A stretch of 63,583 nucleotides of DNA, filler included, from Reticulomyxa filosa (lineage: Eukaryota; Protista; Foraminifera), in the NCBI GenBank assembly GCA_000512085.1. It is 17 parts of 17 records of this genome, joined end to end, with 100 filler letters (N's around TTAATTAATTAA, not from the genome) between each part and the next. Parts side by side here need not be neighbours in the genome. Positions count along the whole stretch, not along the records: positions 39,141 to 46,125 come from ASPP01003602.1; 16 more parts are not named here. One strand, 5' to 3'. Both the position numbers and the translations under genes were made by a program. Under the pieces are notes generated by a model. It saw nothing but the letters and a program-made list of their open reading frames with translations. It did not search any database and was not told the origin of the DNA. Position 1 is the stretch's first letter, and the number at the start of each line of letters is the position of its first letter. Below, in pieces: positions 39,650-44,260 of the stretch.

Positions 39650-40853
39650 TTTAGAATGGCAATTGACCATTGTGTGTCCACAGATGAGGTAGAGGAGTGA
39701 CGATCACATTGTTATTTGGAGTAGAGAATTTCAACAGCCATGAGCAGAGAACACAAAGCATAGGAAAGCAAAACAAAATATACTAATTCAAATTGAAAAA
39801 AATGTATCAGAAATGAGCTGTCGAACTTGATCACATACATCCACAAAGCAATTTACGGATTGGTTTTAGCATTGATCTTTTTTGATTTTTTGTGTGTATG
39901 TATCGAAATGCAGCAAAGTCTTGTATTTTCAAATGGCAAAATGGTTTTGTCATATATTTTTTTTTCATTGTAGTCTTTGTCGGCCATGATGTGAGCCGAC
40001 GAACGCAAAGAGGACTCAAATGAATCGTCGATTGGATCGATTGCACTTGCGAAGTGCACACTGTAAAAATGTTTCAATTGTGCAAGTTTGGTTTTGGCGT
40101 GGAGTTGTTGTTAGAACGACAATGTTTGTAAAGGCAAATGACCATCAAACAAACCAATCGTCTCAAAGAAATGACGGTTATTTCTTTAGACTTTGTATCC
40201 ATCGGGTATTGTCCAATTCGATACGCTAGACATGGGGATATCGATCCCTCCGTTTGGAATTTCGTCCACCGGTACATGCGAGAGTATACAAAGATAATAC
40301 ATCACTAGTCATGACTTTAACCGCATTAATATTGATATGGCTTTATTATTACATAATATATGTACATGTATATACTCCATTGTGATGACCACAAAAAAAA
40401 AAAAACTTTCATTCATTCGTTGAAAGCTATATTGATCACATAAACTATGTCCAGACATTCTATTTGCAACATTTGATCCATCAATTGCTTTTGATTCATC
40501 CCTTTTCGATTTTGTTTCATTTTTTATTCAACCATTTCATATAAAAAAAAACAAATGTCCACAACGAAACATCCGATTATTAAGCATCCAAATGTAATTC
40601 TTTGATACAGCTTTTCTTTTAGAAGCTTGATCTTATTTATCATACTGCTCAGTTGGTTGTAGGATTTTTCAAACACTTGTGATTCCTTTCGTAACTTTAG
40701 ATATGCTTCTTCCACAAATAAAAGAGTGTCCGAAGAATATCGAAAAGGTGATTGTTCCAAATTATCATTATTGTTTGGATTCATTATTTCCTCCATGACA
40801 AGATCTTCAAATCCAGATCGCGTTTTTTTTTTTAAAGAAGCCACAGAGTTCAC
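39650..40853 (-). pseudogene. Hypothetical multi-exon gene, apparently disrupted
   Basis: Coding-like ORFs 40524-40853, 40074-40277 and 39853-40077 in shifting frames; no recognised domain. Confidence 0.35.
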
Positions 40854-40935
40854 ACTCTAAAAATAATTTTTTTTTTTGGAGTAAAGCTTTGAATGAAATT
40901 TGTCAGAGAAAAAGATGTTTTCAGAAAAAAATAAT

Positions 40936-42367
40936 AAATTGAATTAAATTGAATAAAATTGTAATTAAACTAAATTGTGATTGAAATTGAATTAAATTGA
41001 AGATTAAACTGAAATTGAACTGAATTGAAGTTAAATTAAAGTTAAATTAAATTAAAGTCAAATTGAGCCAAAATTAAGTCAAAATTGAATTAAACCAAAA
41101 TCAGGTTGAATTAAAAGTCAAATTACAGTTGAATCAAATCAAAGTCAAATTAAGTTAAAGTCAAATCAAGTCAAATCAAATCAAAATTGAATAAAGCCAA
41201 AGTCAAGTCAAATTAATTGAACCAAGCCGAATCAATTTAAATCAAGCTAAATAGAGTGATTGAAGTAAAGAGGCCAGAAATCAGCCAGATCGATCAGAAA
41301 TAGTCAAGTAAGTTGAGTCAAATTAATCCAAGTCAAACTGGTTTGGATCATATTGGAATGTTTTTTATTATTATTTTTATATTATTTTATTATTTTTAAA
41401 ATTACTTTATTAATAATTGGATTGGAATTGGATTAATAATTAAAGTTGGCTTATATGTGGAGTTTACTGGATGATGGACCGTAATATAATATCTCTTGGA
41501 AAGAAGGAGGAGGACACTGGAATCCTTGCTATTTAATAAACCTTAACTTTTGATATCTTGAAACATAGAATTTTCTTTTTTTCATTCTTCTTCTTTTTAC
41601 CTATATTTATATAGAAACATACAATGCAACAAACAAACACAAACACAAATAAAAAAAAAAAAAAATAGACAAACACACAAAATTGTTTGAATTATGTTCT
41701 TAAAACAAACGTAAAAGTATAAATATATAAAAATATAAACATATAAAAATATCAATACATAAAAATAAATCGACTTAAATGGTTGTTTCATTCAAAGATT
41801 TTTTTATCAAGGTTCCAATACCTCTACTCCCTCCATTTCCGTCATTTTAAATAATTTAAACTGGTCCAATCCATCCAGACTCCACGCTACCAACTTAATT
41901 ATTAATACCAATCCAATCCTTTTTTTCATCTTTTATTTTCTTTTTTTTTCCAACACAATCCTCCCCAATCTAACCCAAACCAACCCAACACCCCAAACAC
42001 AACCAAACCAAACCAACCTAGCCGCCCCGGCCCCCCTAAACCAAACAACACATATTTAACCCAACCAAATTAAAACAACTCAATCCAAAAAACCCAACAT
42101 AACACCAACCAATCCAATTTTAACCTAACTTAACCCAACTTAACCCCAACTCAACCCAACACCAACCTAAAACAACTACAATCCAACCCCAACACAACCC
42201 AACTCCAACTTAACACAACCTCAACCCAACAATAACACAATTTGACCCCAACTCAACCCAACCCCAACGTAACTCCAACGCAATCCAACAACAACATAAC
42301 CATCAACCTAACACAACCCCAACTCCAACCTAACCCAACTACAATCAAACACAAATTAACCCAATTT
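40936..42367 (-). ncRNA. Cryptic long inverted repeat; predicted G-U-rich hairpin that can form only on the minus strand (arms 40936-41528 and 41808-42367)
   Basis: Arms align in register, including their irregular 5/6-mer spacing. Differences are directional (left A vs rc-right G, left C vs rc-right T). The repeat is directly seen; an RNA function is inferred. Confidence 0.7.
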
Positions 42368-44260
42368 CCTTCTTTGGTTCAAATGAACCAAATCTTGCAA
42401 AAGTCTGGTTAATAATAACCCAAATCCAATTAAAATTCCAATCCAAATATTTGGCGCAAATCTTTTATCTATGAAATTACTTGTAATTGAATGAAGATAA
42501 TGCATAGCGCCATAATTGTGATATGCGCACCACATGTCATCCACAATGTTTTCCATACAAGAAATCCCACAGAATATAATATAACAAGTTAATAGCATTA
42601 TCAATAGCATTGCCATCCAATTTATGATAAATTCAAATATAGTCTTCTCTGGGACTTGTTCTTGCCGCTGTTTTTGATAATATTCATCTTGGCCCATAAA
42701 TTTCGTTTGATGATATCGCAATCCACGTTTTATTCTTCCTTGTATAGCACCGTTATAAAAAACAGTTGCAACCTTTTCCTCATTTACTACATGTGCTTGC
42801 ACTTCTTTTTCTATAATATCAACAAACACATACAATTATTACAAGCAAATAAATATAAATAAATATAAATTATTCATATACCTTTACGACAATGCAATCC
42901 CATTTTTTCTTGTAATAATTGTTGTCGAATTAATGGGATTTGCCTTGTCGTAATTTGGCGTTTGTATGATGGTGATTGCGACGATGGTGATAATGATAAT
43001 GATTGCGATTGTGATGAACGTATTGAAGAATATGATGTCATTGGTAATTGAGTTGATTTGGATGTGAAAGTTGAATGGATGTGGACGTTGGTGTGGATAT
43101 AGTCATAGGTGACACTGATCTTGATATAGTCTTGTGTGATTCAGTGGATGGTGCCATAATAGTTTGTGTGATCGTTGATTGATACTGGAACGTCGCAAGT
43201 GGACCAACTGGATAATGCATCTGGATTGGTTGTGTTGTATCAACATCACTACTTGATTGATAGGATGTCAATATTTCAGGTGTTGGCGATCTTGTTGATG
43301 CATCTGGAAATGATAGCAATTTCTTTAGTTGGTGTGGCGGTGTAACTGCCACCACCGTTTCCTGAAGCGATAGTCTTGGCGTATGTGATCGAAGCTGTGG
43401 TGATGGTGTTAATGGTGCATTTAGCACTAGATCATCTAAGTATTGGGACTTCAAATGGAAGTTGTCAATGTTATCTCCTACACTTTGTGGAACCTTTATA
43501 ACAAGTGATGATATTAATTGTGGAGATTGCGATTTTGGAGATTTTGGATTTGTTGCATTTGATGACGTTGATGGTGATGATGGTGGATTAGCGACATTAG
43601 ATAATTGCGATTCTGGTGATGATGGTGGATACGCAACATTTGATGATGGAGATGGCGAATTTGCAACATGTTGTGGAGATTCTGTCTTTTCCAAACTGAC
43701 ACCAAAATGTGGTGACACAATATTTAAATTATTTAATAATTTTGTTGTATCGTCCAATGATATAACTGCAACTTCTACTGATTGTGATGCAGCAATATCC
43801 AATCCACTTAATAATTTTGTAGAATCATCTAATAATGATTGTGATGATACCTTTGCTACTGATTGTGATTGTGATTTTGTAATTTCAATTTTCTCTAATT
43901 GTGAAGCGGCAATATCCAATCCACTTAATAATTTTGTAGCATCTTCTAATGATTGTGGTGATGATGACTTTGGCAATTGATGTAATGAGGATTTAGTTGT
44001 TGATTTTGTAATACCCACTGCATCTGATTGTGAATATGCTATATCTAATCCACTTAATAACTTTGTTGCATCATCTAATAATGATTGAGATGATGCTCTT
44101 GCCATTGATGATGGTGATTTTGCTGATGATTCTCGTGAAATAGCAACTGAATCTGGTTGTGATTTGGCAACCCCACTTGTTGTGCTACATCATCTCTAAC
44201 TAACTCTTCATTATAAAGTAATCTCTCCAACTCTATTCGACAATAGGGGTTAAAATCCAT
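42356..44260 (-). CDS. Ser/Pro-rich protein with internal LLDDATKLLSGLDIA repeats and C-terminal TM helices; frameshifted
   Basis: ORFs 44075-44260, 43038-44105 and 42356-42835; intron at about 42820-42886; frameshifts near 44172 (G-run) and at 42950-43070. Confidence 0.6.

What the first reader, a model, noticed from the sequence alone, without database searches (positions are those of the whole stretch)
40936..42367. Cryptic ~0.5-kb hairpin that can fold on only one strand, held by G-U pairs
Seen: an A-rich pentamer satellite (40936-41358) and a C-rich one (41948-42367) look unrelated, but they are the two arms of one inverted repeat. A more conventional inner stem (41418-41528 vs 41808-41920) continues it around a 279-nt loop. 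Hand alignment of 41054-41112 to the reverse complement of 42191-42249 is ungapped over 59 nt: 32 identical, 16 A/G, 6 C/T, 5 A/T, and no G/A or T/C. Block 41325-41358 vs 41948-41981 gives 19 identical, 12 directional transitions and 3 other. On a minus-strand RNA every transition is a G-U wobble (the A/T columns are U-U); on the plus strand they are A-C mismatches. Inference: a strand-specific long dsRNA (hairpin-RNA/endo-siRNA precursor or 3'-UTR structural element) that keeps RNA pairing while erasing the DNA palindrome. It would be invisible to ordinary repeat finders. I know of no such element described in Rhizaria.
Basis: partly seen in the sequence, partly recalled or inferred. Interest (0 to 1): 0.92.

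Follow-up and report, generated by a model that had tools for sequence, protein, structure and literature searches.

The report
One-strand-only long RNA hairpin after gene
Right after the stop codon of a Reticulomyxa filosa membrane-protein gene lies a roughly 540-base-pair hairpin that only the gene's own RNA strand can form, because a third of its pairs are G-U wobbles; paralogous genes carry it too and it evolves as if the RNA pairing is being preserved, but no expression data could be obtained.

Summary
Window 40928-41358 aligns to the reverse complement of 41948-42375 over 433 columns with 7 gap columns. There are 231 identities, 109 A/G, 40 C/T and 34 A/T columns, and only 1 reverse transition. 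As RNA the minus strand folds at -514 kcal/mol and the plus strand at -198. As DNA both strands give -101. Shuffling 5- to 40-nt blocks destroys the fold, so the match is base by base, not two satellites that happen to pair.

The piece is the whole contig ASPP01003602.1 of Reticulomyxa filosa. The hairpin starts at the stop codon of an annotated 580-aa gene, on that gene's sense strand. A paralogous contig (L003) carries the same exon, hairpin and asymmetry. A third, more distant paralog (L006) has the stop codon followed by a similar G/T-rich arm with under 2% C.

Between the two comparable copies, pair-preserving transitions in the outer stem occur at the loop rate (12.9% vs 11.6%). Pair-breaking transitions (3.6%) and transversions (2.8% vs 10.9%) are depleted.

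Best reading: an RNA-level-constrained element just downstream of the coding region. Its function is untested; an RNase III/Dicer substrate or a dsRNA-binding-protein platform are the likeliest. The main rival is strand-specific DNA damage acting on a functionless inverted repeat.

The parts
41948..42375 (-). 5' outer arm of the hairpin on the sense (minus) strand. It is G/U-rich and almost free of C (7 C in 408 nt; G 42%, U 44%, A 12%). Its base overlaps the last codons and the stop codon of the upstream gene.
   Evidence: Alignment; composition; fold.
41921..41947 (-). A-rich strand of the internal loop on the 5' side. It faces another A-rich strand and so cannot pair with it.
   Evidence: Sequence; unpaired in the fold; conserved as A-rich in L003 and L006.
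41808..41920 (-). 5' half of the inner stem. This is an ordinary, degenerate Watson-Crick inverted repeat.
   Evidence: about 79% identity to its partner, several indels, no strong directional bias; it evolves like neutral sequence between paralogs (13 changed pairs kept, 16 broken).
41529..41807 (-). Terminal loop of about 279 nt, AT-rich. It contains the motif AACCATTTAAGT, which is shared with both paralogs.
   Evidence: Paralog identity is 77.5%, with transitions and transversions about equal.
41418..41528 (-). 3' half of the inner stem.
41359..41417 (-). A-rich strand of the internal loop on the 3' side (59 nt).
40928..41358 (-). 3' outer arm on the sense strand (U 48%, A 27%, C 15%, G 10%). 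It is the most conserved part of the locus between paralogs: 89% identity and only 4 transversions in 192 aligned columns.
41266..41302 (-). A 37-nt island in the 3' arm that is identical in the paralog L003, even though its G+C-rich partner in the 5' arm (about window 42004-42036) is deleted in L003.
   Evidence: Alignment; longest shared word of 37 nt.
42356..42835 (-). Last exon of the annotated 580-aa gene (P0001, gene span window 42356-44260). It encodes two hydrophobic segments and a basic tail, ...NQRRKLG*. The stop codon at 42356-42358 lies inside the base of the hairpin.
   Evidence: The paralog L006 ends ...NKRRKNN* at the same place.

Best explanation
This is a conserved, strand-specific RNA hairpin lying directly 3' of the coding region of a small family of R. 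filosa membrane-protein genes. I infer that it is transcribed with the gene as part of the 3' UTR or of read-through RNA.

On that RNA a G/U-only 5' arm pairs with an A/U/C/G 3' arm to form an outer stem of about 430 bp. The stem has 231 Watson-Crick pairs, 149 G-U pairs and 34 U-U mismatches. It is followed by an A-rich internal loop, a decaying inner stem of about 110 bp, and a 279-nt loop.

Selection acts on RNA pairing only. Under the AT-biased mutation I assume from this 35%-GC genome (assumed, not measured), changes that keep a pair accumulate freely (G-C to G-U, G-U to A-U and so on). Changes that would create A-C or other mismatches are removed. The result is a duplex that exists in one RNA strand and in neither DNA strand.

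Shown here: the structure, its strand specificity, its position at the stop codon, its recurrence in paralogs, and the substitution pattern.

Inferred: transcription and function. My best guess for function is that the long dsRNA is recognised by an RNase III/Dicer-type enzyme or by dsRNA-binding proteins. That would give small RNAs, or control of 3'-end formation, stability or localisation of the mRNA.

The near absence of C from the 5' arm needs an extra cause. It could be selection for a G/U-only arm, or damage to the displaced non-template DNA strand.
For: Structure
- The 433-column alignment has 149 directional transitions and 1 reverse.
- RNA folds at -514 vs -198 kcal/mol; DNA folds at -101 vs -101.
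- Shuffle and block-shuffle z-scores run from -12 to -24.

Position
- The contig is ASPP01003602.1. The gene P0001 ends at window 42356, on the strand that folds.

Recurrence
- L003 carries a homologous exon and hairpin. Its sense strand folds at -286 and its antisense strand at -161 kcal/mol, although its 3' arm is cut by the contig end.
- L006, whose protein is 38% identical over the shared domain, has a stop codon at the same place followed by a 360-nt G/T arm with 1.9% C.

Constraint, window vs L003
- Allowed transitions: 38/295 = 12.9%, about equal to the loop rate of 30/258 = 11.6%.
- Pair-breaking transitions: 6/168 = 3.6% (P = 0.0008 against allowed, P = 0.004 against loop).
- Transversions: 13/463 = 2.8% against 10.9% in the loop (P = 2e-5).
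- Changed pairs in the outer stem: 25 kept, 7 broken, including one double change from G-C to U-A. In the inner stem: 13 kept, 16 broken (P = 0.009).
- Permuting substitutions among sites with the same base gives 32.2 +/- 2.4 kept, against 38 observed (P = 0.011).

Internal control
- G-C to A-C changes are common in the inner stem of the same locus (6 cases). Such mutations therefore do arise here, yet they are almost absent from the outer stem.

Mismatch types
- The tolerated mismatches are the ones that are mild in RNA: U-U 34 and G-A 6, against A-A 2 and A-C 1.
Against: - There is no RNA evidence. No run was listed, so transcription of the minus strand through the hairpin is inferred only from gene orientation.
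- L003 has lost 33 nt of the 5' arm opposite a perfectly conserved 3' segment. It has two further deletions in the 5' arm and lacks the stop-codon region. At least that copy may be decaying.
- Only two copies could be compared across both arms. The structure was taken from the window copy, which biases kept/broken counts. The site-permutation test is only modestly significant (P = 0.011, or 0.09 when restricted to columns with both arms present).
- A strand-specific mutation process preserves pairing automatically and could explain the 149:1 asymmetry without selection.
- Loop transversion rates may be inflated by misalignment of low-complexity AT-rich sequence.
- No target with 16 nt or more of complementarity was found on the contig.
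Confidence: 0.5

Rival explanations
1. A functionless inverted repeat reshaped by strand-specific DNA damage. The G-rich transcript of the 5' arm forms R-loops, leaving the non-template (sense) DNA strand single-stranded. Cytosine deamination (C to T), adenine deamination (A to G) and depurination (A to T) then enrich that strand in G and T. All three changes happen to leave sense-strand RNA pairing intact, so the one-strand hairpin is a by-product.
For: - If all directional columns are assigned to the 5' arm alone, one process explains them: A to G at 109 of 166 sites, C to T at 40 of 45, A to T at 34. The inferred ancestor then has the roughly 25% G+C seen in the left arm.
- C opposite G is much rarer in the 5' arm (5 of 45) than in the 3' arm (61 of 170), P = 0.001. 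This needs an arm-specific force that pairing selection alone does not give.
- The 5' arm has 1.7-1.9% C in all three paralogs.
- Enrichment of G and T on a strand that is often single-stranded is established for vertebrate mitochondrial heavy strands (my own knowledge, not checked here).
Against: - This does not explain why the 3' arm is the most conserved part of the locus (89% identity, transversions 2.1% against 10.9% in the loop).
- It does not explain why pair-breaking transitions are depleted about 3.5-fold relative to allowed ones.
- Since the paralogs split, transition rates in the arms are no higher than in the loop, so there is no sign of continuing hypermutation.
- The 3' half of the inner stem lies between the two outer arms on the same strand and still has 28% C on the sense strand.
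- It still requires minus-strand transcription.
Confidence: 0.27
2. A sub-case of the best explanation: an endogenous hairpin-RNA (endo-siRNA) gene. Dicer cuts the long G-U-rich stem into small RNAs that act on the paralogous genes or on related satellite transcripts. G-U pairs keep the DNA from being a palindrome, avoiding silencing or instability triggered by inverted-repeat DNA. This would be a natural equivalent of engineered G:U hpRNA transgenes.
For: - The stem length and architecture fit hairpin-RNA loci.
- In plants, hairpin transgenes in which every C of the sense arm is replaced by T (18-26% G:U pairs) still trigger RNAi and escape the self-silencing that perfect inverted-repeat DNA attracts (PMC9263138). 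Here the 5' arm is likewise nearly free of C.
- With DNA parameters the outer stem is essentially lost.
Against: - No small-RNA or RNA data are available.
- Whether R. filosa has Dicer, Argonaute or RdRP was not established here (searches gave nothing on this species).
- No complementarity of 16 nt or more outside the hairpin on this contig. The longest word shared with L006 is only 14 nt, so action in trans on distant paralogs is doubtful.
- With 35% G-U pairs plus 8% U-U mismatches, the stem is well beyond what the plant work tested.
Confidence: 0.2
3. Genome-defence mutagenesis of repeated DNA (RIP-like), or a fossil of A-to-I hyper-editing of a perfect dsRNA that was copied back into DNA.
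For: Dense directional transitions are confined to the long, co-linear part of a duplication, with very few indels (7 gap columns in 433). That pattern looks like a burst rather than slow decay.
Against: - RIP changes C to T on both strands, which would give all four column types. Here the count is 149 to 1.
- Read as C to T on the minus strand, the least-mutated context is CpA (12 of 33), the opposite of the Neurospora preference.
- Read as A to G, a 5' G neighbour has the highest rate (13 of 16). This is contrary to ADAR preference, and the two arms show different neighbour preferences.
- The 34 A/T columns are unexplained.
- The state is old. It is shared by paralogs whose proteins are only 38-51% identical, and it has been maintained since.
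- To my knowledge neither RIP nor ADAR has been reported from Rhizaria.
Confidence: 0.04
4. A foldback-type transposon or MITE whose long terminal inverted repeats are built of short subrepeats.
For: The arms are long and made of degenerate pentamer-like units around a non-repeated middle.
Against: - There is no target-site duplication at the ends.
- The base of the repeat overlaps the gene's last codons and stop codon.
- Homology with L003 runs continuously from the exon into the hairpin, so gene and hairpin were duplicated together.
- A transposon does not explain the strand asymmetry.
Confidence: 0.03

Closest known systems
Engineered G:U hairpin-RNA transgenes (Zhang et al. 2022, Nat Commun, PMC9263138)
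   Same: One arm has its cytosines replaced by thymines. The RNA still folds through G-U wobbles while the DNA is no longer a perfect inverted repeat. The hairpin forms from one transcript strand only.
   Different: Those constructs are synthetic. They have 18-26% G:U pairs in one orientation and no other mismatches, and they are proven to trigger RNAi. This element is natural. It has 35% G-U pairs in both orientations (109 and 40) plus 34 U-U mismatches. Expression and small RNAs are untested.
Natural hairpin-RNA / endo-siRNA loci (Drosophila hpRNA loci, mouse oocyte hairpins, Arabidopsis IR71 and similar); comparison from my own knowledge
   Same: A long inverted repeat of several hundred base pairs with a loop, thought to be transcribed into an intramolecular dsRNA.
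   Different: In those loci the arms are close to Watson-Crick complements at DNA level, so either strand could fold. Here arm identity is only 53% and one strand cannot fold. Dicer dependence and targets are known for those loci and unknown here.
Inverted-repeat Alu elements in human 3' UTRs; comparison from my own knowledge
   Same: Long intramolecular dsRNA in the 3' UTR of protein-coding mRNAs. It is bound by dsRNA-binding proteins and affects mRNA retention, decay or translation.
   Different: Those are derived from transposons and are symmetric at DNA level. Their A-to-G changes are made on the RNA by ADAR and are not encoded in the genome.
Repeat-induced point mutation (RIP) of fungi; comparison from my own knowledge
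   Same: Dense transitions confined to duplicated DNA.
   Different: RIP acts on both strands and prefers CpA. It inactivates repeats and is known only from fungi. Here the changes have a single polarity, CpA is the least affected context, and pairing in one RNA strand is preserved and conserved.

Membership tests
Hairpin-RNA (endo-siRNA precursor) locus | Inverted repeat able to form a long (over 100 bp) intramolecular RNA duplex | tested here: met
   Outer stem of about 430 bp plus an inner stem of about 110 bp; -514 kcal/mol on the minus strand.
Hairpin-RNA (endo-siRNA precursor) locus | The foldable strand is transcribed | not testable with these tools
   No sequencing run was listed. The only evidence is orientation: the hairpin begins at the stop codon of a gene on the same strand.
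Hairpin-RNA (endo-siRNA precursor) locus | Dicer-dependent small RNAs of about 20-26 nt map to the arms | not testable with these tools
   No small-RNA data. RNAi genes of R. filosa were not assessed.
Hairpin-RNA (endo-siRNA precursor) locus | Complementary target transcripts exist | tested here: inconclusive
   Only this contig and three short paralog contigs could be searched. The longest antisense match outside the hairpin is 15 nt.
Structured cis-regulatory 3'-UTR element | Lies downstream of the stop codon on the sense strand, in a conserved position in related genes | tested here: met
   Stop codon at 42356-42358 inside the base of the hairpin. L006 has its stop at the same place followed by a G/T-rich arm. 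L003 has the hairpin after the homologous exon.
Structured cis-regulatory 3'-UTR element | Substitutions between homologues preserve base pairs more than expected | tested here: met
   Allowed transitions 12.9%, forbidden transitions 3.6%, transversions 2.8% against 10.9% in the loop. Changed pairs 25 kept and 7 broken, against 13 and 16 in the inner stem. Permutation P = 0.011. Only two sequences were compared and there was one double compensatory change, so the support is moderate.
Structured cis-regulatory 3'-UTR element | Lies within the mature mRNA, upstream of the poly(A) site | not testable with these tools
   No transcript data.
RIP-type repeat mutagenesis | C to T changes on both strands of both copies, so both G/A and A/G, and both T/C and C/T, columns appear | tested here: not met
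   149 columns of one polarity against 1 of the other.
RIP-type repeat mutagenesis | CpA is the preferred target dinucleotide (Neurospora type) | tested here: not met
   Read as minus-strand C to T in the left arm, a 3' A gives the lowest rate (12 of 33), against 51 of 71 for a 3' C and 17 of 19 for a 3' G.
ADAR-type hyper-editing footprint | A to G with a 5' G neighbour disfavoured, and the same neighbour preferences in both arms | tested here: not met
   A 5' G neighbour has the highest rate in the right arm (13 of 16), and the two arms differ in their preferences.
Foldback transposon / MITE | Terminal inverted repeats flanked by a target-site duplication, with copies dispersed independently of neighbouring genes | tested here: not met
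   No duplication at the flanks. The repeat overlaps the stop codon, and homology with the paralog is continuous from exon into hairpin. Dispersal across the genome could not be tested.

The most novel reading that the evidence does not exclude
Foraminifera keep long dsRNA-forming elements in their genome as 'RNA-only palindromes'. One arm is held free of cytosine, so every transition in the partner arm still pairs. The hairpin therefore exists only in the sense transcript, while neither DNA strand nor the antisense RNA can fold. This would be a naturally evolved counterpart of the engineered G:U hairpin design. It is attached to the 3' end of a gene family and maintained by selection, possibly as a source of small RNAs or as a handle for mRNA transport or decay.
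Probability: 0.3. Interest if true: 0.8.

Novelty: new variant of a known kind. Interest (0 to 1): 0.66.

Why it matters
Long inverted repeats are usually found through DNA self-complementarity. This element is invisible to that approach: an ordinary repeat finder sees only 35 nt of it. Yet it would form one of the longest stems found for a protein-coding transcript, and on one strand only.

If the constraint on RNA pairing holds up, three things follow:
- Selection can keep a half-kilobase dsRNA while the DNA palindrome decays away. That removes the genome-instability and silencing costs of perfect inverted repeats, the principle plant engineers arrived at by design.
- G-U-tolerant, strand-aware scans should be added to genome annotation, since more such elements may be hidden.
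- It gives a first concrete handle on post-transcriptional regulation in Foraminifera, where almost nothing is known.

If the asymmetry is instead purely mutational, it is an unusually clean natural record of strand-specific DNA damage at a transcribed repeat.

Tried and rejected
No data or nothing found
- Expression: the look-up of sequencing runs listed no run.
- Rfam: no relevant hit.
- Pfam on six flanking ORFs: nothing.
- Two exact-pattern scans of metagenome contigs with conserved hairpin motifs: no match.
- The Glöckner 2014 genome paper is not held. Papers searched for RNAi genes in R. filosa gave nothing specific.

Hunting for more copies
- The junk translation of the G/T arm (P0003 residues 86-237) found only itself.
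- P0004 and P0005 from the exhaustive protein search lie on an unrelated metagenome contig and look like low-complexity matches. They were dropped.
- An exact-product look-up of the 355-aa ORF failed because the real gene is spliced.

Direction of change (was the ancestor G+C-rich or A+T-rich?)
- Neighbour-context tables were inconclusive.
- Confusion of column states between internal repeat units was also inconclusive. Internal periodicity is weak: class agreement is 0.63 at shift 5.
- Parsimony on paralog quartets (18 A-to-G, 6 C-to-U) is not independent of the assumption that the repeat began perfect.

Explanations rejected
- Chance pairing of two satellites: rejected by block shuffles and by the absence of any other G-U-compatible inverted repeat in the 7-kb contig.
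- Assembly artefact: rejected because an independent paralogous contig has the same architecture and the arms are only 53% identical as DNA.
- An intron reading of the hairpin: rejected because the stop-codon position and the basic tail are conserved between the window gene and L006.

G-quadruplex potential of the 5' arm is low. It has 2 motifs with G3 runs in the window and none in L006, so this is not a conserved feature.
Full report

Yes.

A gapped local alignment of 40900-41540 against the reverse complement of 41800-42400, in which minus-strand G-U counts as a match, gives one alignment: 40928-41358 against 42375-41948. It has 433 columns, only 7 of them gap columns. The columns, written as left arm / reverse complement of right arm, are:

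| Column type | Count |
|---|---|
| Identical | 231 |
| A/G | 109 |
| C/T | 40 |
| A/T | 34 |
| T/G | 6 |
| G/A | 1 |
| T/C | 0 |
| Other | a few |

Left-arm G is matched by G in 61 of 63 cases and left-arm T by T in 108 of 117. With Watson-Crick-only or plus-strand-wobble scoring, only the short inner stem is recovered.

Folded as RNA, 40920-42380 gives -514.3 kcal/mol on the minus strand, as one nearly continuous stem, and -198 on the plus strand.

For the outer arms alone the minus strand gives -365 kcal/mol. Controls give -173 +/- 8 (dinucleotide shuffles), -186 +/- 9 (5-nt blocks) and -245 +/- 10 (40-nt blocks). The plus strand gives -80 against -71 +/- 5. The pairing is therefore co-linear base by base. 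It is not a by-product of two pentamer-like arrays with complementary composition.

With DNA energy parameters both strands give -101 kcal/mol and the outer stem is not a stable feature. The structure exists in one RNA strand only. No other such repeat is present in the 7-kb piece.

**2. Anatomy on the sense (minus) strand**

- 5' outer arm, 42375-41948. G 42%, U 44%, A 12%, C 1.7%.
- An A-rich stretch of about 27 nt.
- Inner stem, 5' half, 41920-41808.
- A 279-nt AT-rich loop.
- Inner stem, 3' half, 41528-41418.
- An A-rich stretch of 59 nt, facing the first A-rich stretch. The two cannot pair.
- 3' outer arm, 41358-40928. U 48%, A 27%, C 15%, G 10%.

Pairs in the outer stem, written 5' arm-3' arm, are listed below.

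| Pair or mismatch | Count |
|---|---|
| U-A | 108 |
| A-U | 57 |
| G-C | 61 |
| C-G | 5 |
| G-U | 109 |
| U-G | 40 |
| U-U | 34 |
| G-A | 6 |
| C-U or U-C | 3 |
| A-A | 2 |
| A-C | 1 |

The inner stem is an ordinary, decayed inverted repeat. It is about 79% identical, has several indels, and shows no strong polarity.

**3. Where it lies**

An exhaustive protein search with the ORF that abuts the hairpin found a 580-aa protein, 100% identical over residues 430-580. Its gene lies on ASPP01003602.1 of assembly GCA_000512085.1, a 6985-bp contig that is exactly this piece. The paralogs found later are named as Reticulomyxa filosa hypothetical proteins.

In window coordinates the gene spans 42356-44260 on the minus strand. 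It has no Pfam domain. It ends in two hydrophobic segments and a basic tail...NQRRKLG, with its stop codon at 42356-42358. That is inside the base of the hairpin, on the strand that folds.

There is no target-site duplication at the ends of the repeat.

**4. Paralogs**

Three more family members were found in the same assembly.

- L003 (ASPP01026112.1, 1435 bp). It carries the homologous last exon followed by a homologous 5' arm, A-rich spacer, inner stem, loop, inner stem, spacer, and the first 197 nt or so of the 3' arm before the contig ends. Its sense strand folds at -286 and its antisense strand at -161 kcal/mol. The proximal outer stem gives -131 against -87 +/- 5 for shuffles.
- L006 (ASPP01049169.1). 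This is a more distant paralog. It ends ...NKRRKNN* at the same place and continues with a 360-nt G/T-rich arm, an A/T-rich spacer, and the loop motif AACCATTTAAGT before the contig ends.
- L002 stops just before the stop codon.

The 5' arm has 1.7-1.9% C in all three copies. The asymmetry is therefore older than these duplications and has been kept since.

The annotated proteins P0003 and P0006 read through the G/T arm. These are almost certainly gene-model artefacts.

**5. How it evolves (window vs L003)**

Identity by region is shown below.

| Region | Identity |
|---|---|
| Exon | 76% |
| Loop | 77.5% |
| Inner stems | 79% |
| 5' outer arm | 85% |
| 3' outer arm | 89% |

Rates at sites that are paired in the window's outer stem are shown below.

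| Substitution class | Count | Rate | Comparison |
|---|---|---|---|
| Transitions that keep a pair | 38/295 | 12.9% | Same as the loop transition rate (30/258 = 11.6%, P = 0.70) |
| Transitions that break a pair | 6/168 | 3.6% | P = 0.0008 vs allowed; P = 0.004 vs loop |
| Transversions | 13/463 | 2.8% | Loop 10.9%; P = 2e-5 |

Other tests point the same way.

- Of the outer-stem pairs that changed, 25 are kept and 7 broken. The kept ones include one double change from G-C to U-A. In the inner stem 13 are kept and 16 broken (P = 0.009).
- The inner stem shows six G-C to A-C changes. Mutations of the forbidden kind do arise at this locus and are simply not retained in the outer stem.
- Re-dealing the observed substitutions among sites with the same base gives 32.2 +/- 2.4 kept, against 38 observed (P = 0.011). 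Restricted to columns with both L003 arms, P = 0.09.

This is the pattern expected of purifying selection on RNA pairing with G-U tolerated. The caveats are:

- only two copies were compared;
- the structure was taken from one of them;
- the loop alignment is low-complexity;
- L003 carries a 33-nt deletion in its 5' arm opposite a 3' segment that is 100% conserved over 37 nt (window 41266-41302), plus two other 5'-arm deletions and loss of the stop-codon region. That copy may be decaying.

**6. Where does the asymmetry come from?**

This holds whether the change is C to T or A to G on the minus strand. It also leaves the minus-strand RNA paired. So the 149:1 polarity is not in itself proof of selection.

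I could not fix the direction of change. Neighbour contexts and internal repeats were uninformative.

If the pair classes are read as a flux A-U <-> G-U <-> G-C, the 3' arm behaves as expected for an AT-rich genome under a pairing constraint. Its G:A ratio opposite U is 40:108, and its C:U ratio opposite G is 61:109.

The 5' arm is pushed further towards G and U. Its G:A ratio opposite U is 109:57, and its C:U ratio opposite G is 5:40. The difference in C is significant (P = 0.001).

That extra push could have either of two causes.

- Selection for a G/U-only arm. Such an arm pairs with either transition state of its partner.
- Damage to the non-template DNA strand while it is displaced by an R-loop. 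C to T, A to G and A to T all enrich G and T. This is an inference from established ssDNA damage chemistry and was not tested here.

A purely mutational account does not explain three things:

- the low transversion rate and high conservation of the 3' arm;
- the depletion of pair-breaking transitions;
- the sense-strand C retained in the 3' half of the inner stem, which lies between the arms.

RIP-like and ADAR-like footprints fail their own defining features. A foldback transposon is unlikely.

**7. Most likely mechanism**

I commit, at about 0.5, to an RNA-level-constrained hairpin that is made as part of the gene's 3' UTR or read-through transcript.

Shown: the structure, strand specificity, position, recurrence and substitution pattern.

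Inferred: transcription, and the function. The candidate functions are an RNase III/Dicer substrate, or a dsRNA-binding-protein platform acting on 3'-end formation, stability or localisation. The specific endo-siRNA reading is about 0.2. No complementary target outside the hairpin was seen on the sequences available.

**8. Comparison with what is known**

The closest analogue is synthetic: G:U hairpin transgenes. There, every C of one arm is changed to T, so the RNA folds while the inverted-repeat DNA, and the silencing it attracts, is abolished (PMC9263138).

Natural hairpin-RNA loci and inverted Alu pairs in 3' UTRs share the long intramolecular dsRNA but are symmetric at DNA level (my own knowledge). 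Two full-text searches for a natural long hairpin with this degree of one-strand G-U pairing returned only the engineered constructs and unrelated work. That is not proof that none has been described.

I rate it a new variant of a known kind.

**9. Limits**

- No RNA data of any kind could be obtained.
- The rest of the R. filosa genome could not be searched by DNA, so the number of such elements is unknown.
- Covariation rests on two copies.

Noticed in passing
window 43773-44162 (minus-strand gene P0001): Tandem DNA repeats of 117-129 bp (about 2 copies each, 76-81% matches) lie inside the coding region. They correspond to a repeated protein motif of the type SQSLLDDATKLLSGLDIAASQS in a Ser/Pro-rich N-terminal half.
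   Followed up: no
window 40524-40853, minus strand: An unannotated 109-aa ORF lies about 75 nt downstream of the hairpin on the same strand. It ends in a hydrophobic, tail-anchor-like segment and has no Pfam hit. A TTTTTAG just upstream could be a splice acceptor. If this is a real gene, the hairpin sits between two genes in tandem.
   Followed up: partly
L003 65-1028 (P0003, RFI_29901) and L006 10-1129 (P0006, RFI_39924): The deposited gene models read through the G/T-rich 5' arm of the hairpin. This gives Cys/Val/Gly/Leu/Trp-rich C-termini that look like annotation artefacts. The window gene and L006 have a stop codon at a conserved position before the arm.
   Followed up: partly
window 42423-42451 vs 41408-41434: The exon segment that encodes the last hydrophobic helix (NIWIGILIGFG) is complementary to the 3' half of the inner stem: 18 nt at 94% and 27 nt at 70%. 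It also resembles the 5' half of the inner stem and the 5' arm. This could mean alternative pairing, or that the G/T-rich arm arose from the end of the exon.
   Followed up: no
window 41921-41947 and 41359-41417; L003 about 690-715 and 1205-1240: The two strands of the internal loop between the outer and inner stems are both A-rich on the sense strand (T-rich on the plus strand). They cannot pair with each other. This A-against-A arrangement is kept in L003, and an A/T-rich spacer is also present in L006.
   Followed up: no
L003 about 575-580 (A1 alignment columns 476-508); window 42004-42036 and 41266-41302: L003 has lost the G+C-rich island of the 5' arm (33 nt). Its partner in the 3' arm is nevertheless the longest perfectly conserved stretch between the paralogs (37 nt). 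That stretch may therefore have a role of its own.
   Followed up: partly
L004, L005 (ENA ERZ26222911 contig ctg1015660_15x_l): The weak protein hits P0004 and P0005 (E = 2.8e-5, several short matched stretches) lie on an unrelated 88-kb metagenome contig with densely packed same-strand genes. They are probably low-complexity matches and not relatives.
   Followed up: partly
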